Made by a program: the position numbers and the translations under genes. From positions 186,001 through 250,000 of the IMG/VR virus record IMGVR_UViG_3300027985_000918: a stretch of DNA of 64,000 bases; one strand, given 5' to 3'. The notes below the pieces were generated by a model. The model made no database searches. It was given only the letters and a program-made list of their open reading frames with translations, and was not told the DNA's origin. Position 1 is the first letter of the stretch, and every line of letters starts with the position of its first letter. This document shows positions 13,869 through 23,557 of the stretch, one piece after another.

Positions 13869-15617
13869 GTGAACGACGGAGACCACTTCATGAAAATCGG
13901 ACACGAAAAAATCTTTCCTCAGCAAATTCAGATGGCCACGCTGATTTGGATGCTGCTCTTGGACCGTCTCCAGGGTAACCCCCATGCCAGAACGCCTCTA
14001 CTAATGGCCCAGCCCCAGCAGGGCAAGACAGGGGCGATCATCTGCCTCATCGACAAGTTCATCGACTACTGCGTGAAGCATTCCAAAACATTCCAGGTTA
14101 TCGTGACCTGCGGACTGGCAGAGTTGTCCCTACGGGACCAGACGCTGGCACGCCTCACGGAATCTGTAGCAGATGACGGAATGACGCTGACAGGGGCCTG
14201 CCTCGACATCAAGGCTCGGAGCACTGGGTTGGCTCGGTACAAGCCTGTTGCGGGTACGACAATGCCCGGGATCCTCGTGGTGAACCGATCCACTAAACTT
14301 CGCAGTCTCAAAAAACATCTTCTCTGTGATGTGGATCTTCGACTGGTCATCTCCGATGAGTGCCACGTCGGTAACGGGAAGGGTGGCTGTATGGATAAGT
14401 TCCTGCAGACACTGGGAGTGCGACCAAATCAACAGATCCATACCTGGCAGGACGATGCCTGTGGCGGGAAAACACTCTTCGTCCCCGTGTCTGCAACCCC
14501 GTTCGCCCATTTCGCCCTCTCTGCCAAATATAAGGGGGCTCCGGCATCCCGCACTCTCTATGACACGGTGTATGTAGCCCCAGGTGAGAACTATACAAGC
14601 CCACTGGATTTGTGGGACAACCGTCTTCTTCCTACAGGAGCCCTTTTCTGTAATGTAGGGGACGAGCTGGTCCCTTCTCCCATCCTGGGAGACATCTTCG
14701 ACCATTTCGAGCAGGAGTGCGAAAGCTACGGTCCGGGGTATTCCCTCATGAGGGCTACCGGAAAAGAACACGAAGCCCTCATGGGTTACATTGAGAACCG
14801 TAACCGCAGAGGGATCCCGACTGAAGTCATGTGCTTCGACAGCAAGCCTGGGAAGGATTCGGACTCCAGACCAATTTCAGAATTGCTGTCGCAATTGGCA
14901 ACTCGGCCACAGGTTCCCGTGGTGTTGGTAATCCGAGGTGCTTTCCGGGCGGGTATGACCCTCCCCCAAAACCACTACATCCGCCTCTGGGTAGAAACAT
15001 CTTCCGACAACGTGGATACCCAACTCCAGGCAGGAGTAGGACGGGCCTGCGGGTATGGGCGAAAAGGGGATGTTTTCCCCATCTACTGTGACATCCCCAA
15101 GATCCAAGAAGCCTTGGACTTCTACCGGAATCTGGAGTTTTTGGAGCCGGTGTCCGCAATCCCCTCTGGGGTACAGAACCACCAGGCCCTCAATACGGTC
15201 GATGTCGCTCCCGTGGGGTGGATCTCCAAGCAGGAATGGATTGATGGAAAGGGCATGCTGCATCCCGCAAGAGACCGGATGTGGTTCAAACCAAGGCATG
15301 CCCAAATTGCTACCACCAGGGGCAACATCGCCAAAGATACCGCTCTGCTGACACTACGAGGAACCCGTGAAAGTGGCAACACATGGGGGCATGAGGTCAA
15401 CGGCAAAGCCGATTCGGAGCGTTACCGGGAGTATGTGAGACTGTACCCCGACCGGCAACCCGATTCCACCCTGGAGGCGATGCACCACCACTATGACCTG
15501 TTGCTTAAAACTTTTCCGGGGTGCGAAGGCAACGTAATCGTGTTCGAGCACACTGGGGATGAATCCCCGGATGGTGACTCTATTCAGAGGCGTCGGTCTG
15601 CTCTGGCGGAATACTAA
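13869..15617 (+). CDS. SF2 (DExH) helicase/ATPase-like protein, Z1-endonuclease-like motifs
   Basis: Walker A AQPQQGKTG, Walker B ISDECH, motif III SATP, and DTQLQAGVGRACGY. The likely start is ATG 13890 (GGAG RBS). Confidence 0.75.
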   Translation: MNDGDHFMKIGHEKIFPQQIQMATLIWMLLLDRLQGNPHARTPLLMAQPQQGKTGAIICLIDKFIDYCVKHSKTFQVIVTCGLAELSLRDQTLARLTESVADDGMTLTGACLDIKARSTGLARYKPVAGTTMPGILVVNRSTKLRSLKKHLLCDVDLRLVISDECHVGNGKGGCMDKFLQTLGVRPNQQIHTWQDDACGGKTLFVPVSATPFAHFALSAKYKGAPASRTLYDTVYVAPGENYTSPLDLWDNRLLPTGALFCNVGDELVPSPILGDIFDHFEQECESYGPGYSLMRATGKEHEALMGYIENRNRRGIPTEVMCFDSKPGKDSDSRPISELLSQLATRPQVPVVLVIRGAFRAGMTLPQNHYIRLWVETSSDNVDTQLQAGVGRACGYGRKGDVFPIYCDIPKIQEALDFYRNLEFLEPVSAIPSGVQNHQALNTVDVAPVGWISKQEWIDGKGMLHPARDRMWFKPRHAQIATTRGNIAKDTALLTLRGTRESGNTWGHEVNGKADSERYREYVRLYPDRQPDSTLEAMHHHYDLLLKTFPGCEGNVIVFEHTGDESPDGDSIQRRRSALAEY

Positions 15618-15619
15618 GC

Positions 15620-16498
15620 ATGTACCGAGGTGACACCCCCGCAAAAACCCGGTGCCGGAAATTGGTATGGGGCCTGCACAAGCGGCTCTTGGGAGAGGCT
15701 TTTCTGTCCACCCCCCACGTTTTCACGGCCTCTCGCTTCGGTGGTGACATCGAGGTACTATTGAAGAAGGGGGTGCCCCCCGATAATGTGTGGGCGGTTG
15801 ATACTGACCAGGAGGCCGTAAGAGACCTTATCCCCCTAAAGAAGCAACGGGGGTTCCGGCTATTTCCCAGAAACATCACCCAAGTGGTACAGCAGAACCC
15901 CTCGGTGCAGTCGGTCTACCTTGATTTGTGCGGGCATCTGAAAGGCCGAGATACCAGGATGTCCATCACGGAGACCGTTCGGTCCTTGCCCCGAGGCAGC
16001 GTTCTAAGTGTCACGCTGCTTCGGGGGAGAGAACAAAATCTCCATATGGACAGGGAACAAGAGCTGATTGGCCTGATCCAGCAACACACAAAGCACCCCG
16101 TGACTCTTTTGCAGGCCCTTTCCTACTTGTCAAACGACCATAAATCGAAAGGGTCCCCCATGATCACTTGGACTTTTGTGCTTCGGGAGCATAAGTCCAA
16201 GGTGAGGAGAGTTGATTTGAGCAAAAACACCGAAAACAAGTCCCAGAAGCAAAGCCAGGCGGCTCGGAAGGCGTGGGAGACTCGCCGTCGCCTAGCGGCA
16301 GAGAAAGAATCCCTGTCCCAGAAACGAAGCCAGGCGGCTCACAAAGCGTGGGAGACTCGACGCCGCTCCACTGCGGAGCAAGAAACCCTCAGTTTTGTGG
16401 ATGAGGGCCTCGGGTCTCCCACTAGCACCACCGTTGAGCCCCTAACGGTGAAGTTGATTCAGTTGTGGCAGCACATGACCCAAAAGCTGAGGGGATAG
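15620..16498 (+). CDS. Putative SAM-dependent methyltransferase-fold protein with tandem basic C-terminal repeats
   Basis: TASRFGGD..VWAVDTD..VYLDLCG looks like Rossmann MTase strands. Two copies of SQAA(R/H)KAWETRRR. Confidence 0.5.
   Translation: MYRGDTPAKTRCRKLVWGLHKRLLGEAFLSTPHVFTASRFGGDIEVLLKKGVPPDNVWAVDTDQEAVRDLIPLKKQRGFRLFPRNITQVVQQNPSVQSVYLDLCGHLKGRDTRMSITETVRSLPRGSVLSVTLLRGREQNLHMDREQELIGLIQQHTKHPVTLLQALSYLSNDHKSKGSPMITWTFVLREHKSKVRRVDLSKNTENKSQKQSQAARKAWETRRRLAAEKESLSQKRSQAAHKAWETRRRSTAEQETLSFVDEGLGSPTSTTVEPLTVKLIQLWQHMTQKLRG
16241..16365 (+). repeat. Two-copy 75-bp direct repeat (SQK(Q/R)SQAA(R/H)KAWETRRR)
   Basis: tcccagaagcaaagccaggcggctc.. at 16241 and tcccagaaacgaagccaggcggctc.. 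at 16316. Confidence 0.9.
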
Positions 16499-16500
16499 CC

Positions 16501-17283
16501 CTATTCTGGGGTATCGCCGAACATAGAAAGGATGTCCTTGGGGTCAGTGTGGTTCTGCCACAGAGCTTCCTTACTCACCTTCCCTCCGTGCTTGGCATTA
16601 CTGGCTTTTATGTCCAGATAGGGCTCGAAGGGAAGCCAGTTAGCCCCTACATTCTCACACACCATGACCTGCCCTTTTCTCCCTCGGCACCACTCCCCTA
16701 GACGCTCAAAGTCAATATCTGTCGAACTACACTTGTAGTATTTTCCGGCCTTGGCATAAGGAGGATCGATGAACCAAGTCGCCTCAATGTCAGGAGCATC
16801 CTCATAGCTACTCTCGATCAGAGTCCAATGCCGAATATGGTCCACCTGGGAGGCGATTCGTCGCTTCACAGGGGACCCCCATCCAACATTGAACGACCTG
16901 CTAGATGCCTTGCCAAACTCTCCCCCTCTGTGCCTGCGAGCCCAGGAACTCAAAGTTTTGCCGGGTCCGGTACCCGCCTGATTGAGCCACCAACCGATCA
17001 AATACCGGGCTTCCTCACACACATTCAGATCCTCCACGCTCTGGCCCTCTTGAATGTCCGGAAGGGCCAGAATTTCCTCGGGTTTGACCCGAATCAGGTA
17101 CTTCCATGTGGCGGCGATCACCGGATCCTTTTCGATCAGGATGATGTTTTTTTTGTGGTGGTATACCGAGTACCCGGCCCCCCCGCAAAAAGGTTCCACA
17201 ATGGTATCGTAGTCTGGCTCAGGGTAATGGGGAGCCGCCCGATACTTCCCGCCGTAGAAGTAGAAAAAAGGCTTAAGGATCAT
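16501..17283 (-). CDS. DNA adenine methyltransferase (Dam-like, D12 class)
   Basis: FYFYGGK, IVEPFCGGAG (motif I) and FIDPPY (motif IV) in alpha-class order. Confidence 0.9.
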   Translation of the reverse strand: MILKPFFYFYGGKYRAAPHYPEPDYDTIVEPFCGGAGYSVYHHKKNIILIEKDPVIAATWKYLIRVKPEEILALPDIQEGQSVEDLNVCEEARYLIGWWLNQAGTGPGKTLSSWARRHRGGEFGKASSRSFNVGWGSPVKRRIASQVDHIRHWTLIESSYEDAPDIEATWFIDPPYAKAGKYYKCSSTDIDFERLGEWCRGRKGQVMVCENVGANWLPFEPYLDIKASNAKHGGKVSKEALWQNHTDPKDILSMFGDTPE

Positions 17284-17309: not shown

Positions 17310-18896
17310 TTAAATTGGCTTATAGCCCACCATGAAAGGTTCCCAAGATGGGCGGAGGGCAGTTCCGTACCCCTCCCATAGAGCGGCTTCGGATGAGGCG
17401 GCTTTCGTGAGGTACTGCACCCCAGCGGACCCGGCATCCCCTTCCCCCTTGAAACCGTCAACCTCCCCTGCGTTTTTCCGCTTGGAGTTGGGTCGGCTGG
17501 AGGGATTGACTCCTACCACCTCTCGCTGTTCCTCAACACCCAGATACTTGTCGATGCCCCTGCTGACGTTGAGGTTCTTCGGAAATCCGGAATTCCCCGT
17601 GATGAACACTTTGTCCTTGCGGCGAGCCAGGAAAGCACCTGAGGGCACCCGGACGCACCAGACAACACCCTTATACGAGGTCTCAGACTCTCGGAGATGC
17701 CGAGACTGGAACTGCGTCTGAGGGATCATGTGGAGGCTCACTGAGCCCTTGTCGAAGTTTACCCGCCCCTGGCGATCCATTAGGTGGGCCAGGGTCTGAA
17801 ACCAGACCAGATCCCGGGGGTCTTTCTGGTACAATACGGGACACCCGCTCTCGGTAGACCCGTCACTCTTGATGGCAACGCTCACGAAAGCGTGTTTTTC
17901 CTCCTGGCTCATCCCCCACAGTAGCTTCCAGGTGGGGTGTTTGCCCGGCAGGTCCTCCCGCACCCGCTGGGCCGTCTCTCCCGAGAAGAACCAACAGAAC
18001 TCGGTGTCCGGACGGCCCTTGTGCCCCCGATCACAAAGGGACACTTCGTGTTCTGGCACGAGCTTGTCCAGCAGATCCTGAATCTCCTGGACATGTTCGG
18101 GGTTGACCGAACTCTGATAAATGCGGACCCCCGTACCCTTGTCGTCGAAGCCGCCCTTCGCCCAAACCCATGCCAGAAGGCGAGCCCAGTCCGGACCCCC
18201 GATCCCCTGACCGTGGTGCATCCCAGCCAAAGGCAGGAACATGTGGTTCCACCGAGGGATCAGTCCAGCTTCCTTGACATCCCACTTCGGCTCGTACCAC
18301 GACCAGAGGCCCCCTGCCTCCATCTTACGGTGCTGGGGGCGATGGTAGACCCGGTGGTTGGGGGTCAGGAGCTGATCGGTATTGTCGTTGCGGAATACGG
18401 TCATCTGGCCCTCGAAAGGTGCCCGGATAACTTCTGCCACAGCCTCCAACTGGATGGTGCTGGTCTCCGCATCCCAGGCAGCCACCTTTTCCCCCTGCTG
18501 GACATCCACACCCAGCTTCCAGCCCTCAGCGGTCAGAATCTCGGTATCCTCGGACAAGCAGCCATAACCCCACGCCTCCATCTTGAGGTCCTGGAACCCC
18601 ACCTCTTCGAGCACCTGGGCCAAACGGTGGTAGGTTCGGGTGGCCGAGAACACCTTGACCACCCCACCGGGCTTGAGCTTTCGGTACACCAGGGACCACA
18701 GCTCAGCCGAGAAGGCAACACCGGAGCGGTCCCAGTCCTTGGACATGAATCCAATCTCAAGTCACTCGTAGGGAGGATCAGTGACGATTGCGACGACCGA
18801 GTCGTCGTCCATCTCCTGAATGCGGACAGTGCAGTCCCCAAGCAGGAGGCGGAACGTCAGATCCTCCCTACGAGCCTTGGCAATCTCCTTCGGCAC
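17310..18896 (-). CDS. Beta-class N4/N6 DNA methyltransferase, N-terminal catalytic fragment; in-frame TGA at 18762-18764; contains intein
   Basis: LLLGDC..IVTDPPYE*LEIGFMSKDWD..KLKPGG..TRTYHRL..WGYG|intein|SGFPKNLNVSRGIDK..WEGYGTALRPSWEPF..KP. It lacks the FxGxG motif. Start is GTG 18896 (GGAGG RBS) or ATG 18980. Confidence 0.85.
17592..18560 (-). mobile_element. Intein (323 aa) in DNA methyltransferase, probably degenerate LAGLIDADG
   Basis: Starts CLSEDTEILT and ends KVFITGN followed by Ser. Excision restores WGYG-SGFPK. Endonuclease block C reads LLAWVWAKG. Confidence 0.92.
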
Positions 18897-19069
18897 GAGG
18901 GTTTCCTCCAGTGAATGGTTGAACGAACATACCCAGGCTGCGGCACGAGTGGCAGGCCATCTGCTCTCGTGAGTGCGCATACTCCTCACGGGCTGAGAGA
19001 AAGCCTACCCCCTGTACCCACCTGTGGAAGGAGGGCTTCGGGGGGACCCCGTGAAAACAGTCTGGATGG

Positions 19070-19369
19070 CTATCTCCTGCCTTCTCGGTTGACGGAGCAC
19101 GCCTCGATGGCACTGCAGCTCTGGATCTCGGCCAGGCAAGTCGGGTTGAGGGCGTGACCCTGTTTCTGAGTGACCTCGCAGAATACCTGGCAGGTCGTCC
19201 CATCCTCCAGCGGGGCAGCCTCCGGGCACCTCAGCTCGGCCATCTTGTCGCAGGCTGCCTTGCACATGTGGGTGTCGTTGGGCTCAATAGGGTTCGGGCG
19301 GAGGAAACTGGTGCAGGACAGGGCACCCGCCAGCAACACCGCCCCCAGCAATGCGATCAGCTTCTTCAC
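19070..19369 (-). CDS. Cys-rich lipoprotein
   Basis: Signal peptide with lipobox MKKLIALLGAVLLAGALSC, then 8 further Cys in about 80 aa. Confidence 0.8.
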   Translation of the reverse strand: MKKLIALLGAVLLAGALSCTSFLRPNPIEPNDTHMCKAACDKMAELRCPEAAPLEDGTTCQVFCEVTQKQGHALNPTCLAEIQSCSAIEACSVNREGRR

Positions 19370-19372
19370 GGC

Positions 19373-20170
19373 TTACTCCTTGAAGGGCTCCCAGCCGGCC
19401 TGGGGGACCCAGAACGATTTGGAGACGGGAGAGGCAATGGTCTCGGGAGCCACGATTCCGAACCCGTCCTCCCCCCAGTAAGCCCCCCATGAGTTCTCGA
19501 TGATGAAGTTTCCGCCGACGAACCCCACAATGACGATGGCGTGACGACCCCTTTTCGCATCCTCTGCCACTGGCATCAACGGTCTTAGGGGACCGTTTTC
19601 CTTCCAGTGCATACTCCAGGCCCTATCCACGTTGGTCCCGAACACTACCGGGTTCCCCGCCCGGAGGCAGTTGATGACCTCGTCCACCCGGTTGTTGCCG
19701 GTGGACTGGATCTGGTAGAACGCCTTGACCTTGGTCAGGTACGCCTTCCGCATCGCCATGAAGCTGGGGGGCGTGTTGATCTTGTCCGGGTCGAACGGCC
19801 AATCCTTTTCCGGGGGAACGCCGAACCTCCGCAGAGCGTCAAAAGCGTGTCCGATGTAAGTTCCGTCGTCGACATGGGTCTCAGGAGGCTTCATCATCTC
19901 CCGGGCTAGGTAGTAGACAGCCATCCGACTCAAGTCCACATGGGCAGCATGACCGTACTTCTGGATGCGCTTGATCTCCAGAGCTTTAACCGTGGAGTTC
20001 GCCACACAGGAGTTGGTCCACTGCTGATCATGGCGGGGGCTGGAGAACGGACGGAGGTCGGGTTCGGGGTCTCCGCCGACGACCATCTTCGGCTTGAGCA
20101 GGGCTTCGTATGACCAGTGCTTCGAGGAGGCCGGGTCAGCTCGGAACCCCCCCAACGGATAGGTTCTCAT
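19373..20170 (-). CDS. Papain-like cysteine peptidase (family C1A)
   Basis: QQWTNSCVA (Gln, Cys), RHAIVIVG (His), IENSWG (Asn), WGEDGFG. Confidence 0.92.
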   Translation of the reverse strand: MRTYPLGGFRADPASSKHWSYEALLKPKMVVGGDPEPDLRPFSSPRHDQQWTNSCVANSTVKALEIKRIQKYGHAAHVDLSRMAVYYLAREMMKPPETHVDDGTYIGHAFDALRRFGVPPEKDWPFDPDKINTPPSFMAMRKAYLTKVKAFYQIQSTGNNRVDEVINCLRAGNPVVFGTNVDRAWSMHWKENGPLRPLMPVAEDAKRGRHAIVIVGFVGGNFIIENSWGAYWGEDGFGIVAPETIASPVSKSFWVPQAGWEPFKE

Positions 20171-20559
20171 TCTCTACTCTCCGGTGCATTCAGGTTCTTG
20201 AAGAATGTGTCAGCATCCTTCGACTTCTTGCCCAAAGCCTCCACCGGACAGCCCAAGGCACAAGACACTGACGTGCAGTTGTCTTTGTGCAGCAGGAGGA
20301 TATTGGTCGGAAACTTGCCTTCAGGGTTCCAAACGGCACGTTTCTTGAACGCCTTGTTAAAAACGAAACGGCCCTTTTCATTGTAGCTGTCCCCCTCCCA
20401 GGGGGAATTCACATCCAGGTTGGCAAGAGGAGGAGGGCCGTTGATGTTGGGAAGGCGAGCCCCATCAATGTCCAAAGCCCCCGTCCCATGGGTCAGCACG
20501 TTCTTGACAATGCTGGATTCCCCCAGTGGCTTCCGAACCATATGAATGGCGTACATCAC
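20167..20559 (-). CDS. Middle fragment of beta-class DNA methyltransferase
   Basis: MVRKPL..NVLTHGTGALDIDG..GKFPTNI..CP..L..TFF matches the central ARKPL..NVL.HGTGALNID..GRWPAN..RFF segment of phage N4/N6 MTases. Confidence 0.8.
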   Translation of the reverse strand: MMYAIHMVRKPLGESSIVKNVLTHGTGALDIDGARLPNINGPPPLANLDVNSPWEGDSYNEKGRFVFNKAFKKRAVWNPEGKFPTNILLLHKDNCTSVSCALGCPVEALGKKSKDADTFFKNLNAPESRE

Positions 20560-21353
20560 TCTCCTTCAAACATCAAGTCGAACAGGTTAGGCTCCGTTTC
20601 CACGAGTGCTTCCGCCGCATACCTTTTCTCAGTCTGGAGGTTCAGCAATCTCTGGCCGGGGTGAACCTGACTCCAGTGCTCCAGCCGTGCGGTGGCAATC
20701 TCCACGTACTCGGGCGTCATGTCGATGCCGGTGAAGTCGTGACCCGTCCGCAGACAGGCGATGCCCGTACTTGCCGTCCCCATGAAGGGGTCAAGGATGT
20801 GACCCTGGGGAACATCCCTCAGAAGGTTGTGGAGGAGCCTCCAGGGCTTTAGGGTTGGATGGTCGTTGTGGACCTCTTTGACCGTGCGGGAGGCCCCTGC
20901 ACGGGGGCTTCTGAGGCCATCCGAACCCTCTTTACGCCCGGTGGCCTCCGCCCCGGACTTACCTGGAAGATGCCCGCAGCCGGCTTCCCTTTCCGCTCGT
21001 CCTACCTTGGGGACGTAATGGAAGGGGTCCGTAGCGTCCTCGACCACCAGGATGGTGTCCCGGATCTCGAACCCCCCGTCTTCGAGGTTTACTGCCCCCC
21101 GGTGTCCGAGGGGGTTCCCCTCGGGAGCAACCACTAGCATGTGGGCTCCCGGCTTAAGGACCCGCATCATCTCAGCGGTGTCCTCTTCCGTCGGAGTCCC
21201 CACTGCCAGGATGCCCGTCACGGTCTCGTCTTTCACCGACGACCAGTTCATCTCCTGAATGTCAGGGATGAACATCGCCCCCGGGTGGGGATCCGGGGGC
21301 GACAGGAAGGTGAGCAGATACTTGACCATGTCCGAGGGGAGGGGTCTGCTCAT
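20556..21353 (-). CDS. C-terminal (SAM-binding) fragment of beta-class DNA methyltransferase with degenerate N-part
   Basis: RVLKPG and LEDGGFEIRD but no DPPY, then FHYVPK..RAEREAG, NDHPTLKP, ILDPFMGTASTG, FTGID..YVEIATARL. Confidence 0.88.
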   Translation of the reverse strand: MSRPLPSDMVKYLLTFLSPPDPHPGAMFIPDIQEMNWSSVKDETVTGILAVGTPTEEDTAEMMRVLKPGAHMLVVAPEGNPLGHRGAVNLEDGGFEIRDTILVVEDATDPFHYVPKVGRAEREAGCGHLPGKSGAEATGRKEGSDGLRSPRAGASRTVKEVHNDHPTLKPWRLLHNLLRDVPQGHILDPFMGTASTGIACLRTGHDFTGIDMTPEYVEIATARLEHWSQVHPGQRLLNLQTEKRYAAEALVETEPNLFDLMFEGE

Positions 21354-21994
21354 TTGCTCTCTCGAATCTCGTCCACGAGACCGTACTTAAGGGCGGTCTC
21401 GGGATCCAGCCACAGGTCCCGCTTGAGGGTTAGGGCCAACTTACGGGCCGGGATCTTGGTCCGCTCCTGGTAGATCGCCTTGACGTGATCCATCAATAGG
21501 GTGGAGTTCGCCAGATCGTCCTTCTGCTCCTCGAAAGTGCCACTGAACCACGTCGAAAGCTGGTGGATCAGAATGAACCCATGCTTGCCGATAGTCCGGT
21601 GGGTCCCCGCCACCGACATGAGGGTAGCAGCCGAAGCGGTAGCACCCTCGATGTGGGTGTGGACATCCAGTGGGCACTCCCGGATGGCGTCATGGAGGGC
21701 GAATCCGGCGAACAGGTCCCCTCCGTGAGAGTTGATGTGCAGATGGATAGGCGGTGGAACAACCCCCCACGTCAGGGCCATCCGCTGCAGGTCCAAAGCG
21801 GTCTCCCGGATGTCAAGGATGAGGGACGCCGCCGACTCTTCGGACACGTCCTCGTAGAAATACAGGTGGTTCCGATCCCGAGAGGATTCCTTCCCCAAGC
21901 TCATAGCCTGGGGCATTCCGGCCTTGATGATGGTGATCGGGGGCAGCTCTTCCACTTCTTCCGCCCCATTCGCCCAGTGTCGCCTTCGAGTCAT
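21350..21994 (-). CDS. clpP: ClpP-like serine protease
   Basis: LHINSHGG, ASAAT (Ser), LIHQ (His), KRDLWL (Asp), ALKYGLVDEI. Confidence 0.92.
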   Translation of the reverse strand: MTRRRHWANGAEEVEELPPITIIKAGMPQAMSLGKESSRDRNHLYFYEDVSEESAASLILDIRETALDLQRMALTWGVVPPPIHLHINSHGGDLFAGFALHDAIRECPLDVHTHIEGATASAATLMSVAGTHRTIGKHGFILIHQLSTWFSGTFEEQKDDLANSTLLMDHVKAIYQERTKIPARKLALTLKRDLWLDPETALKYGLVDEIRESK

Positions 21995-22003
21995 TCCCGC
22001 TCC

Positions 22004-23557
22004 TTAGTCCATTTCCAGAAGTTCGCCGAGAGCGTCGATCTCGGCCTGATCCTCGGGCTCCTGAGAACTGCCCGCCCCACCTCCCTCTCCAGGTGGGAGA
22101 TCGTGGCAGGTCAGAAGTCGCCTACAAGGCCATTCTACTCGGGCAACGAAGATGTTGAACGGGGCCTGGTCACGGGACTTCAGGCACTGGAACTGAGCAC
22201 GGTTGATTTCCCGTAGATCATCATCCACCCATGAGGCGGTGACGATGTCGGCAGACCGTTCGGCTTCGTTGGCGTAACTTAGGTGAGTCAAGTCGTAACG
22301 GGCCTGCTCGGTCCGTTCCTTTCGCTTCATAGCGGCCTTGTAACCTTCACGGTTGATCTGGAACAGGGCCACTACGGCGATCCCCATGCCCCGGTTGAAC
22401 GACATAGCGAGGCGCTTCAGGTCTCGGATGACCTCGTTCAGCCGCTCGGTGGTAGAACTGTTCCACTTCCTGGGGCTCATGAGCCCGACGTGGTCCACGA
22501 AGATTGTGGCGAAAGGGCTCTTGGCGAACAGGATCTCGGACTTGGACCGCAGGTCTGCCACGGTGAAGTCCGACTTGTCCGGGTCACCCACCTCGATGTG
22601 GATCTTGCCATACTCGTTGGCTGGGTTGTTCAGGTCCGGCACCACGTAGTTGAACAGGAATTCCCGCTCTGCCGAGTTCAGGACACCGTCTCGGATCTTC
22701 TGGTAATCCAGGCCCACCGACAGATCGGGGTGGCTCTGGAGCCCCAGCTTGTACCGGATATCCTTGAATTTTTCGTGCATCGAGTGCATGGCGTACAGGA
22801 TGCGCCGGCATTGGTTGTAGGGCATCTCCAGGCTGAAAATGACCGAGTCGTGCTTGTAGTAGACGGCCTGATTGTACATCCAGTTTAGGGCGAACGTAGA
22901 CTTCAGCCCACCCGTGAAGGCGGCATGAATCCACAGCTCGTACCTCTTGGCCCCACTGAGGGTCACATCCGCCTGCTGAAGACCCGTCATCTGGCCTACG
23001 CCGGCCAGGGGGTCTGCCTCGATCCGCTCGTACTCCGATTTGAAGTCTTCCCCGTCCGTCGTCACCTCACCGGAGAGACGAGTCCCCAGGGTGGGGGCCA
23101 CGATGTCGTGGCTCTGCTCCATCACATAGCGGGCAGCGTCAATGGGACCCTTGAGGTGCCGCTCGTTCTTGCCCTCCTTGATAATGATGCCGCCACTGGA
23201 GATAGCGGCAGCCTCCTTCATGATCTCTTCCCAGCGGCGGCGGCGGCGGTCCTCTGCCTTGTCCTCCAGCCTCTTCAGGAAGTCCCCTTTGGTTCGGGCA
23301 GGGAGGGGGCTGAGGACCGTCTCCAGACGGTCCACCACTTCCGTCTCGTTGCCTCTCTGGAAGTGCTGCTGGAGGGTGAGGAGGTCGGGGACATGGTTGT
23401 GGGACCGGACGAACGCCCGAATGAAGTTCCAGATGGCGATGTCTTCCGGGATGTCGAAGCCCAGCTCCGACTCCTGGAGAGCCAGGAAGTTGCGAAGGAA
23501 CAGGGTCTCGTTGTCATCGGGGGAAACCCGAAGGCAGGACCGAAGCAGAACCTTCAT
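22004..23557 (-). CDS. dnaB: DnaB-like replicative helicase
   Basis: Variant Walker A AFTGGLKST, FSLEMP, IFVDHVGLM, LFQINR, EAERSADIV, LKSRD. Confidence 0.85.
   Translation of the reverse strand: MKVLLRSCLRVSPDDNETLFLRNFLALQESELGFDIPEDIAIWNFIRAFVRSHNHVPDLLTLQQHFQRGNETEVVDRLETVLSPLPARTKGDFLKRLEDKAEDRRRRRWEEIMKEAAAISSGGIIIKEGKNERHLKGPIDAARYVMEQSHDIVAPTLGTRLSGEVTTDGEDFKSEYERIEADPLAGVGQMTGLQQADVTLSGAKRYELWIHAAFTGGLKSTFALNWMYNQAVYYKHDSVIFSLEMPYNQCRRILYAMHSMHEKFKDIRYKLGLQSHPDLSVGLDYQKIRDGVLNSAEREFLFNYVVPDLNNPANEYGKIHIEVGDPDKSDFTVADLRSKSEILFAKSPFATIFVDHVGLMSPRKWNSSTTERLNEVIRDLKRLAMSFNRGMGIAVVALFQINREGYKAAMKRKERTEQARYDLTHLSYANEAERSADIVTASWVDDDLREINRAQFQCLKSRDQAPFNIFVARVEWPCRRLLTCHDLPPGEGGGAGSSQEPEDQAEIDALGELLEMD

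What the first reader, a model, noticed from the sequence alone, without database searches (positions are those of the whole stretch)
17310..21353. One beta-class DNA methyltransferase split over three genes in reversed order
Established: intact phage N4/N6 (beta-class) MTases run GDC..DPPY..RVLKPG..WxYGSGFPK..GWGTALKPAHEPI..ARKPL..NVL.HGTGALNID..GRWPAN..RFFYCAK..ER..G..NxHPTVKP..LDPFMGSG. Seen here, in transcription order: (1) 20556-21353 carries the C-terminal SAM-binding part (FHYVPK..EREAG, HPTLKP, DPFMGTAS) behind a decayed N-part that keeps RVLKPG and EDGGFEIRD but has lost DPPY; (2) 20167-20559 is only the middle segment (VRKPL..HGTGALDID..GKFPTN..TFF); (3) after an unrelated protease and lipoprotein pair, 17310-18896 is the catalytic N-part (DPPY..EPFMVGYKPI*) with no FxGxG. 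The break points fall on conserved motifs that appear on both sides (..YKPI / ..VRKPL; ..TFFK / ..FHYVPK). Each piece has a clean start and stop, and the first two are translationally coupled (ATGA). Inference: duplication followed by complementary loss produced a heteromeric enzyme in which catalytic, middle and SAM-binding parts are separate chains. Beta-class MTases commonly work as dimers, which makes this plausible.
Basis: partly seen in the sequence, partly recalled or inferred. Interest (0 to 1): 0.8.

Follow-up and report, generated by a model that had tools for sequence, protein, structure and literature searches.

The report
Modular split phage DNA methyltransferase
A huge phage encodes one DNA methyltransferase as separate catalytic, target-recognition and cofactor-binding proteins. 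This layout is conserved in many huge phages, and the catalytic gene also carries an intein and a tiny stop-containing gap that ribosomes may hop over.

Summary
The three methyltransferase (MTase) pieces exist and together tile a canonical phage beta-class MTase. It has an in-frame TGA straight after DPPYE (18762-18764). It also has a 323-aa intein inside WGYG|SGFPK (17592-18560).

The split is old and conserved, not a local accident. At least 150 protein clusters, many on 220-536 kb phage contigs, carry the DPPY-less "N'C" module. Fusion states vary: M-N'C, N'C-N, N-M-N'C and M-M-M-N'C. One N'C is often accompanied by several N and M genes. All pieces are under purifying selection (dN/dS 0.15-0.39).

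AlphaFold models suggest that the SAM-binding half (C) pairs with the separate catalytic half (N). The degenerate N' would then serve the target-recognition piece (M). My best reading is a modular heteromeric MTase with exchangeable specificity subunits.

The stop after DPPYE belongs to a recurrent class. There are 21 junction types of the form codon-stop-short gap, and in 20 the same amino-acid codon follows the gap. They occur in all three frames and always keep every canonical codon. Plain nonsense substitutions are essentially absent. This fits a short ribosomal "stop-hop", with restart at the FMGK methionine as the rival. Neither has been tested experimentally.

The parts
20556..21353 (-). 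N'C subunit (265 aa). It holds a degenerate catalytic-half copy N' (GTPT in place of DPPY; RVLKPG; EDGGFEIRD), a conserved linker (FHYVPK..EREAG) and the SAM-binding half C (HPTLKP, DPFMGTAS).
   Evidence: Pfam N6_N4_Mtase aa 160-221. phrog_67 aa 60-225. BLASTP to intact P0054: aa 110-227, 59% identity, and aa 60-101, 50% identity. Family of at least 150 clusters. dN/dS 0.16.
20167..20556 (-). M subunit (about 129 aa from the ATG at 20556; a GTG lies at 20559). It has a strand with RKPL, then HGTGALDID, a variable target-recognition core, then GKFPTN..C..GCP..TFF. Its start overlaps the N'C stop (TGATG), with AAGGAG upstream.
   Evidence: phrog_3008. M HMM 1e-44. Maps to residues 169-260 of intact P0061. 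Conserved ends and variable middle among paralogues. Junction sequence.
18765..18896 (-). N-a: a 44-codon exon (GTG start, GGAGGA upstream) ending in ..VVAIVTDPPYE. It carries motif IV.
   Evidence: Sequence. N HMM positions 2-32. Conserved in L003 and L018, dN/dS 0.22-0.39 with dS 0.7-2.0.
18756..18767 (-). Recoding or split junction: GAG (18767-18765) | TGA CTT (18764-18759) | GAG (18758-18756), followed by ATT GGA TTC ATG. A GAG-to-GAG hop would give the canonical DPPYEIGFM.
   Evidence: L018 has the uninterrupted GAG ATC GGC TTC ATG, and L003 has GAG|TAATAATACCT|GAG. Census of the same junction class.
17310..18755 (-). N-b: the rest of the catalytic half (IGF-MSKDWD..KLKPGG..WGYG | intein | SGFPK..GYGTALRPSWEPFMVGYKPI). 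The mechanical ORF starts at ATG 18746.
   Evidence: N HMM positions 90-141 and 142-220. BLASTP to intact MTases. dN/dS about 0.16.
17592..18560 (-). Intein (323 aa; Cys1 ... TPNH ... VFITGN | Ser+1) with a probable LAGLIDADG-type endonuclease core, inserted in motif VIII (WxYG|SGFPK).
   Evidence: Boundaries. Weak hits to TIGR01445 (E 0.037) and to RecA mini-intein chains (E 0.014). Intein-free alleles in L003 (WGYGTGFPK) and L018 (WAYGSGFPK). Homologous inteins at the same site in L041 and P0212.
19070..20170 (-). C1 papain-like peptidase (19373-20170) and small lipoprotein (19070-19369). They are syntenic passengers between M and N, not part of the MTase.
   Evidence: Pfam Peptidase_C1. Lipoprotein signal. 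The same pair occurs in L003, L018 and L042.

Best explanation
The locus encodes a modular, heteromeric beta-class DNA (N6-adenine/N4-cytosine type) methyltransferase made of three proteins.

- N carries the catalytic motifs IV-VIII (DPPY, SGFPK).
- M is a target-recognition domain with conserved docking strands at both ends.
- N'C is the SAM-binding half (motifs X, I-III) joined to a DPPY-less copy of the catalytic half.

Inferred assembly: C and N complete one Rossmann fold in trans and form the active site. N' together with the first strand of M forms a pseudo-half that holds the recognition domain. In relatives, several N and especially several M genes accompany a single N'C. M therefore probably acts as an exchangeable specificity subunit.

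In this phage, N must first be matured. The 323-aa intein has to be spliced out. The stop-containing 6-nt gap after DPPYE has to be crossed, most likely by a GAG-to-GAG hop of the peptidyl-tRNA. Alternatively, N-a and N-b are separate chains.

Shown: the anatomy, the conservation and the purifying selection. Inferred: the assembly, the methylation activity, the hop, and the role of M in specificity.
For: Anatomy.

Conservation of the same split:
- L003 (64% identity) and L018 (62%) have N'C - M - peptidase - lipoprotein - N.
- HMM census of loci: L014 has 5 N, 7 M and 1 N'C. L040 has M-N'C, N and 5 M. L016 has M, N'C, N and 2 further complete M plus 2 partial M matches.
- Profile search: the top 150 clusters all have E < 1e-61. 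Architectures are M-N'C 88, N'C 53, N'C-N 5, N-M-N'C 2 and M-N'C-N 2, including M-M-M-N'C.
- No N'C member has DPPY. All have G.PT.

Selection: dN/dS is 0.15-0.39 for N'C, N-a and N-b, with dS near saturation.

Specificity role of M: M paralogues share 36 N-terminal residues and the C-terminal GCP..YFKQV motif, with variable cores.

Structure:
- N'C alone gives pLDDT 84.7 but pTM 0.58. It matches beta-class MTases only at TM 0.2-0.25 and rmsd about 21 A, so N' is not packed on C in the canonical way.
- The natural fusion M-N'C-N (P0260) gives pTM 0.82. Its best structural matches are canonical-order MTases (Trm11, PrmC, METTL5) over 205-260 columns at rmsd 4-6 A. That needs C followed by N in one sheet.

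Junction:
- 20 of 21 class-A junction types repeat the amino-acid codon across a gap that starts with a stop. Gaps are 3-12 nt and fall in all three frames.
- Stop-by-substitution cases are all TGA at Gly positions, five of six in clearly TGA-recoded contigs.
- The 12 nt between the landing codon and the ATG change only synonymously within groups that share a homologous gap.
Against: - No biochemical evidence exists for assembly or activity.
- The pairing of C with N rests on AlphaFold models of a relative and on which kinds of fold they match. I could not inspect coordinates or run a multimer prediction.
- Only three sequences in that alignment link C and N covalently.
- The window holds a single M and a single N, so modular specificity is extrapolated from relatives.
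- For the hop: junction types without a repeated codon exist (L041 TAC TAG TTG AAT GGG; L051 type; TAGC type).
- Every interrupted gene keeps an ATG 9-20 nt after the stop, where restart is possible.
- No consistent RNA structure was found at the junction.
- Synthetic stop-hops in E. coli are, from my memory, inefficient.
Confidence: 0.72

Rival explanations
1. The stop after DPPYE is a true fourth split. N-a (a 44-aa peptide ending in DPPYE) and N-b (restarting at the Met of FMSK, 15 nt after the stop) are separate chains that reassemble. No recoding is involved.
For: Every interrupted gene keeps the ATG, 9-20 nt after the stop. Gene callers annotate such N-b proteins (P0261, P0273, P0274, P0276-P0278). 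The family already works in pieces. Junction types without a repeated codon fit this model better. N-a is under purifying selection, which this model also predicts.
Against: - The Met is about 96% conserved in uninterrupted genes as well, so its presence says little.
- The N-b ATG lacks the GGAG seen before most genes of the window.
- The model does not explain why the codon before the stop is repeated after the gap in 20 of 21 types.
- It does not explain why all canonical codons (G/E, L/I, x, F) are always retained.
- It does not explain why those untranslated codons change only synonymously.
- It does not explain why single-base nonsense substitutions at the same places are absent outside TGA-recoded phages.
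Confidence: 0.3
2. The N gene of this phage is a pseudogene, killed by the TGA and burdened by an intein. The MTase system is decaying here.
For: There is an in-frame TGA. No other N gene lies in the 64-kb window. MTases are often dispensable.
Against: - N-a and N-b are both conserved against L003, which carries the same kind of gap. Their dN/dS is 0.16-0.39 at dS of 0.7 or more.
- The 12 nt after the gap are identical in the two phages, while the gap itself differs (TGACTT versus TAATAATACCT).
- The intein keeps Cys1, TPNH, the terminal Asn and Ser+1.
- There are no other stops or frameshifts in 1.4 kb.
- The same junction class recurs in dozens of otherwise intact genes and in independent assemblies.
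Confidence: 0.07
3. N'C, with or without M, has its own non-methylating role, for example SAM binding or sequestration, or DNA binding. It does not assemble with N, and the co-occurrence is only synteny.
For: N'C lacks DPPY and has its own conserved G.PT.EQ motif. In some loci no M (L041, L042) or no adjacent N was found within 10 kb.
Against: - N and M pieces have no SAM-binding motif of their own, yet N keeps DPPY and SGFPK under selection.
- Natural fusions join N'C to N and to M in several orders.
- N ends and M begins exactly at the canonical break.
- The model of the fusion is compact (pTM 0.82), with C and N forming one fold.
Confidence: 0.08

Closest known systems
Single-chain beta-class N6A/N4C DNA MTases (Pfam N6_N4_Mtase; CcrM 6PBD, M.RsrI 1EG2, M.BceJIV 8URK; phage relatives such as L006 9890-11035)
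   Same: They share the motifs and their order (IV DPPY .. VIII SGFPK .. TRD .. X HPTVKP .. I DPFxGSG). The C half is 59% identical to intact relatives.
   Different: Here the enzyme is three or four chains. It has an extra DPPY-less half (N') inserted between the TRD and motif X. The break-point strands are duplicated, and the copy numbers of N and M vary.
Division of labour in beta-class dimers (CcrM: PMC6787082 abstract; Type III Mod dimer of EcoP15I, from memory)
   Same: One protomer recognises the target and the other catalyses. That gives a ready route to a pseudo-dimer with complementary losses.
   Different: Those are homodimers of complete chains. Here the functions are hard-wired into different genes, and the covalent links cross between the two pseudo-protomers.
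Type I HsdM/HsdS systems and multispecific phage C5-MTases (SPR, phi3T) (from memory)
   Same: Target recognition lies in exchangeable modules with conserved docking parts and variable cores. Several recognition modules serve one catalytic core.
   Different: The fold class is different (gamma-class or C5 enzymes). Here even the Rossmann fold itself is divided between chains.
Naturally split C5-MTases M.AquI and M.EcoHK31I (from memory); complementing fragments of M.SssI (PMC3404938)
   Same: A DNA MTase fold is assembled from two polypeptides.
   Different: Those are C5 enzymes and isolated cases, with no degenerate duplicate half and no separate TRD subunits.
Phage T4 gene 60 bypass with the MobA homing endonuclease (bioRxiv 10.1101/2022.08.31.505936) and synthetic 'stop-hops' (review PMC5009743)
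   Same: The take-off and landing codons match, and a stop codon follows the take-off codon immediately. The site is a recurrent insertion site in a conserved phage gene. Homing-endonuclease genes sit next to that site in relatives (L003, L043).
   Different: The gap is 3-12 nt instead of 50. No stem-loop was found and no nascent-peptide signal is defined. Nothing has been tested. According to the review, no natural in-frame stop-hop was known.

Membership tests
Beta-class DNA MTase (N6_N4_Mtase, PF01555) | Catalytic motif IV (D/N/S)PP(Y/F/W) | tested here: met
   TDPPYE at 18779-18765 in N-a. It is absent from N'C, which has GTPT instead.
Beta-class DNA MTase (N6_N4_Mtase, PF01555) | SAM-binding motif I (FxGxG) and motif X located C-terminal to motif IV and the TRD | tested here: met
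   HPTLKP and DPFMGTAS in N'C. The Pfam hit covers aa 160-221 at 51.7 bits against a cut-off of 26.7. Relative to an intact enzyme the order is N(1-176) - M(169-260) - C(320-438).
Beta-class DNA MTase (N6_N4_Mtase, PF01555) | All motifs lie on one polypeptide that forms one Rossmann fold | tested here: not met
   There are three or four ORFs separated by stops and by two unrelated genes. It works like the family but is not a standard member.
Beta-class DNA MTase (N6_N4_Mtase, PF01555) | Methyl transfer to DNA | not testable with these tools
   This needs co-expression and methylome reading.
Intein | Nucleophile at position 1, block B TxxH, C-terminal Asn, and a nucleophile at +1 | tested here: met
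   Cys1 (CLSEDTEILT), LTPNHRV..VFITGN | S. The penultimate residue is Gly, not His.
Intein | Insertion inside a conserved host motif, with intein-free alleles in relatives | tested here: met
   WGYG|SGFPK here, against WGYGTGFPK in L003 and WAYGSGFPK in L018. Homologous inteins sit at the same site in L041 and P0212.
Intein | Significant match to intein profiles | tested here: inconclusive
   TIGR01445 E 0.037, below its cut-off. PDB mini-inteins E 0.014. No Pfam hit.
Programmed translational bypass or stop-hop | Matched take-off and landing codons that restore the canonical protein | tested here: met
   Window GAG..GAG, L003 GAG..GAG. In 20 of 21 class-A junction types the same amino acid is repeated. 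In 9 the codon is identical.
Programmed translational bypass or stop-hop | Stop or slow codon immediately 3' of the take-off codon | tested here: met
   Seven of the eight junctions found without presupposing a stop there (window, L003, L044, L050, two of L047, L048) have a stop straight after the repeated codon. In the eighth, L041, the stop follows TAC directly with no repeated codon.
Programmed translational bypass or stop-hop | Stimulatory mRNA structure or nascent-peptide signal | tested here: inconclusive
   Folds of five junctions show no shared or significant structure (z from -2.0 to +1.3). The nascent ..DPPY(G/E) is conserved, but its effect is unknown.
Programmed translational bypass or stop-hop | A continuous polypeptide is produced across the gap | not testable with these tools
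   This needs mass spectrometry or reporter assays.

The most novel reading that the evidence does not exclude
Phage beta-class MTase genes, split or full-length, carry a recurrent micro-gap of 3-12 nt straight after the DPPY(G/E/D) codon. The gap begins with a stop, and ribosomes cross it by re-pairing the peptidyl-tRNA on the repeated codon. This would be a natural, widespread 'stop-hop', the short-range counterpart of T4 gene 60. Like gene 60, it may be kept because the insertion destroys the target site of a homing endonuclease that cuts at the DPPY junction. If so, the mature catalytic subunit of this phage needs a ribosomal hop, protein splicing and three-chain assembly.
Probability: 0.5. 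Interest if true: 0.9.

Novelty: new variant of a known kind. Interest (0 to 1): 0.8.

Why it matters
1. It would be a new way to build a DNA methyltransferase. The Rossmann fold would be divided between chains, with a shared cofactor module and interchangeable recognition subunits. A huge phage could then protect its DNA against many restriction systems at little coding cost. The parts could also be re-used for programmable methylation.

2. It gives a natural series of fission, fusion and permutation states for studying how enzymes break up after duplication.

3. The junction after DPPY offers dozens of natural variants of a candidate short ribosomal hop. The 2016 review I consulted (PMC5009743) says no natural in-frame stop-hop was known. 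The variants are directly testable with reporters.

4. Annotation pipelines currently call these genes as fragments or pseudogenes.

Tried and rejected
- Stop-codon reassignment in this phage: rejected. ORFs of up to 2114 aa read through in the standard code, and N'C itself ends in TGA. No tRNA gene lies in the window.
- Simple TGA readthrough as the general mechanism: rejected. L003 has TAA TAA plus a frame change, and other junctions shift frame by +1 or +2.
- Sequencing or assembly error: rejected. The same junctions occur in independent assemblies (L044/L045/L046, L048/L049, and two IMG/VR records of the window contig).
- Random repair scars: rejected. 30 of 31 insertion types begin with a stop.
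- Test of whether interrupted genes ever lack the ATG: uninformative. No extra hits appeared, and Met is about 96% conserved anyway.
- RNA structure at the junction: nothing consistent.
- DNA similarity to deposited phage genomes: only a 117-nt match to mycobacteriophage MTases.
- Literature searches for a split beta-class MTase or for a bypass in MTases: nothing found.
- Multimer prediction: not available. I used a natural fusion protein instead.
- Model coordinates could not be read, so no contact analysis was possible.

Full report
CONTEXT

The window is part of a 402-kb IMG/VR phage contig. It has about 60% GC. It uses the standard genetic code, with ORFs of up to 2114 aa, and holds no tRNA genes. 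Genes around the finding run on the minus strand: DnaB-like helicase (22004-23557), ClpP (21350-21994), then the methyltransferase (MTase) pieces.

CHECK OF THE OBSERVATION

Piece 1 (20556-21353, 265 aa) matches Pfam N6_N4_Mtase only over aa 160-221. It matches phage MTase profiles over aa 60-225. Against intact relatives, aa 110-227 align with the C-terminal SAM-binding part at 59% identity. Aa 60-101 align with the region after DPPY at 50% identity. There is no DPPY; GTPT stands in its place. I call this protein N'C.

Piece 2 (20167-20556/9) aligns with the middle segment of intact enzymes. I call it M. Its start overlaps the N'C stop (..GAG TGA TG..), with AAGGAG upstream. The overlap is therefore TGATG or GTGA, not ATGA.

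A C1 peptidase and a lipoprotein follow.

Piece 3 is not one ORF. After GTG 18896, 44 codons end in ..TDPPYE, and then comes an in-frame TGA (18764-18762). The sequence continues CTT GAG ATT GGA TTC ATG TCC AAG GAC TGG...

The downstream ORF (17310-18746) is interrupted in WGYG|SGFPK by 323 aa that begin with Cys, contain TPNH, and end in ..ITGN before Ser. Profile support for an intein is weak. However, L003 and L018 have the uninterrupted motif, and homologous insertions sit at the same site in L041 and P0212. I accept it as an intein.

Together the pieces cover residues 1-32, 36-97, 98-176, 169-260 and 320-438 of the intact P0061.

THE SPLIT IS A CONSERVED FAMILY, NOT DECAY

Two relatives keep the same order, N'C - M - C1 peptidase - lipoprotein - N. 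They are L003 (a 223-kb contig, 64% identical N'C) and L018 (62%). L018 has three M genes and an intact, intein-free N reading DPPYEIGFMAKKWD.

N'C-like proteins are numerous. A word-based search found more than 60 full-length relatives at 35-62% identity, many on contigs of 220-536 kb. None has DPPY. A profile search of 1.8 billion cluster representatives gave 150 top hits, all with E < 1e-61.

Using HMMs for N, M and N'C, the architectures of these 150 are:
- M-N'C: 88
- N'C alone: 53
- N'C-N: 5
- N-M-N'C: 2
- M-N'C-N: 2
- These include M-M-N'C (P0128) and M-M-M-N'C (P0127).

Fetched loci show one N'C with several partners:
- L014: five N and seven M.
- L040: M-N'C, one N and five M.
- L016: M, N'C, N and two further complete M, plus two partial M matches.

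N always ends at ..WEP..VG.KP, and M always begins ..(V/L)ARKPL. M paralogues of one phage share about 36 N-terminal residues and the C-terminal GCP...YFKQV motif, but differ in the core.

Between the window, L003 and L018, dN/dS is:
- 0.16-0.17 for N'C
- 0.15-0.16 for the N-extein of N-b
- 0.13-0.38 for its C-extein
- 0.22-0.39 for N-a

dS ranges from 0.7 to above 1.5. dS for M is saturated. Neutral decay is therefore excluded.

HOW IT PROBABLY WORKS

N and M have no SAM-binding motif, and N'C has no catalytic motif. An active enzyme therefore needs N and C in one fold.

AlphaFold2 of the window's N'C with a 38-sequence alignment gives well-folded halves (pLDDT 84.7) but pTM 0.58. Foldseek matches beta-class MTases only with TM 0.20-0.25 and rmsd about 21 A. 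This means N' is not modelled on C in the canonical way.

A natural fusion, P0260 (M-N'C-N), was modelled with 78 sequences and gives pTM 0.82. Its best structural matches are MTases of the ordinary strand order (Trm11, PrmC/HemK, METTL5 and others), over 205-260 columns at rmsd 4-6 A, with TM normalised by target length up to 0.70. Such matches are only possible if C (beta 1-3) and the following N (beta 4-7) form one sheet.

I infer two things. C and N make the catalytic domain. N', which lacks a seventh strand, takes the first strand of M and so holds the recognition domain.

This resembles a beta-class dimer in which one protomer recognises and the other catalyses (CcrM, PMC6787082; Type III Mod from memory). 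Here that arrangement would be frozen by partial duplication and complementary loss.

The excess of M genes in relatives suggests exchangeable specificity subunits. All of this is inference. No multimer model, coordinates or biochemistry were available.

THE STOP AFTER DPPYE

L018 reads TAC GAG ATC GGC TTC ATG without interruption. The window has TAC GAG|TGACTT|GAG ATT GGA TTC ATG. L003 has TAC GAG|TAATAATACCT|GAG ATT GGA TTC ATG, which includes a frame change.

Proteins annotated as starting at M(G/N)K.WD led to more cases:
- GGC|TGAATAT|GGC (L044-46)
- GGT|TGA|GGT (L050)
- three tandem genes in L047 (TGAAT, TGATT, TGAAC)
- GGA|TAGTACAC|GGA (L048/49)

An IMG/VR pattern scan found 22 contigs with 15 junction types.

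Overall, 20 of 21 class-A types repeat the amino-acid codon (Gly, Glu or Asp) across a gap of 3-12 nt that begins with a stop. In 9 types the codon is identical. In each case a hop of the peptidyl-tRNA would give the canonical DPPY(G/E/D)xxFM, whatever the frame.

A wider scan added two further groups. One has the stop directly after TAY (TAA, TAGC, TGAC, TGAAC, TGAGTAC; also L041). The other consists of stop-free in-frame loop insertions.

Interrupted genes include both split-type N pieces and full-length MTases.

Two observations speak for translation across the gap and against a mere split with restart at the ATG.

First, stops created by substitution, without any insertion, were found only six times. 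All six are TGA at a conserved Gly position. Five of the six lie in contigs that clearly read TGA as sense. So ordinary nonsense mutations here do not persist.

Second, within groups whose gaps are homologous, the 12 nt from the landing codon to TTY differ only synonymously. There are about eight synonymous events and no replacements, while the flanking coding sequence shows both kinds.

Against the hop:
- Some junction types have no repeated codon.
- A possible restart ATG is present in every case. This is uninformative, since Met is about 96% conserved anyway.
- There is no shared RNA structure.
- There is no experiment.

The review PMC5009743 states that no natural in-frame stop-hop was known. 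Homologues of the gene 60 bypass share the matched codons and the stop at take-off (bioRxiv 10.1101/2022.08.31.505936).

Homing-endonuclease-like genes lie beside the 5' end of N in L003 and L043. In L043 a truncated N copy ends exactly after DPPY. The gap may therefore protect a homing site, as proposed for gene 60. This is speculation.

VERDICT

The system is a new variant of a known kind: a modular multi-chain beta-class MTase. Its catalytic gene holds an intein and a candidate natural stop-hop.

Noticed in passing
L111-L115 (IMG/VR contigs), e.g. the L111 junction DPPY*LSFM*KAW: Phage MTase genes with TGA exactly at conserved Gly positions. These contigs give ORFs 3-5 times longer when TGA is read as sense. 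They are probably phages of hosts that read UGA as Gly (code 25).
   Followed up: partly
L003 8001-9845: The N'C homologue of the relative carries a different intein, with a LAGLIDADG-like core, at HHP|C...HN|TVKP in motif X. The same intein is in P0009 and P0207. The window's N'C is intein-free at this site.
   Followed up: partly
L003 13326-14126 (-) and L043 10869-11852 (-): Free-standing homing-endonuclease-like genes (phrog_559/3339; Zn ribbons plus a Vsr/PD-(D/E)xK-like domain) lie next to the 5' end of N. In L043 a truncated N fragment ends exactly after DPPY beside the gene.
   Followed up: partly
window 16501-17283 (-): A separate Dam-like (D12 class, alpha-type order: FCGGAG first, DPPY last) adenine MTase lies directly downstream of N. 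The phage therefore has at least two MTase systems here.
   Followed up: no
window 13869-15617 (+) and 15620-16498 (+): A 582-aa protein has a weak match to the circularly permuted SF2 helicase of GREB1 proteins (PF20692). It is followed by a 292-aa protein with two copies of a ...SQKRSQAAHKAWETRRR... repeat and no family match.
   Followed up: no
window 19070-20170 (-); L003, L018, L042: A C1 papain-like peptidase and a Cys-rich small lipoprotein form a conserved pair lodged within the MTase cluster in four phages. Their function is unknown.
   Followed up: no
P0127, P0128, P0144: Single polypeptides carry two or three tandem M (recognition) modules in front of N'C. This is reminiscent of the multispecific phage C5-MTases.
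   Followed up: partly
L017 14838-19160; L041 2970-5975 and 6878-9772; L040 1-4002: Relatives carry further inteins or LAGLIDADG insertions in DNA polymerase A, the SNF2 helicase, DnaB and the UvrD-like helicase. These huge phages are rich in mobile protein-splicing elements.
   Followed up: no
L089 (TAY CGCG TAC GGC TAT TCC TTY ATG): One junction has a 4-nt insertion and a repeated TAC but no stop at the start of the gap. It may be a frameshift-type variant of the same phenomenon.
   Followed up: no
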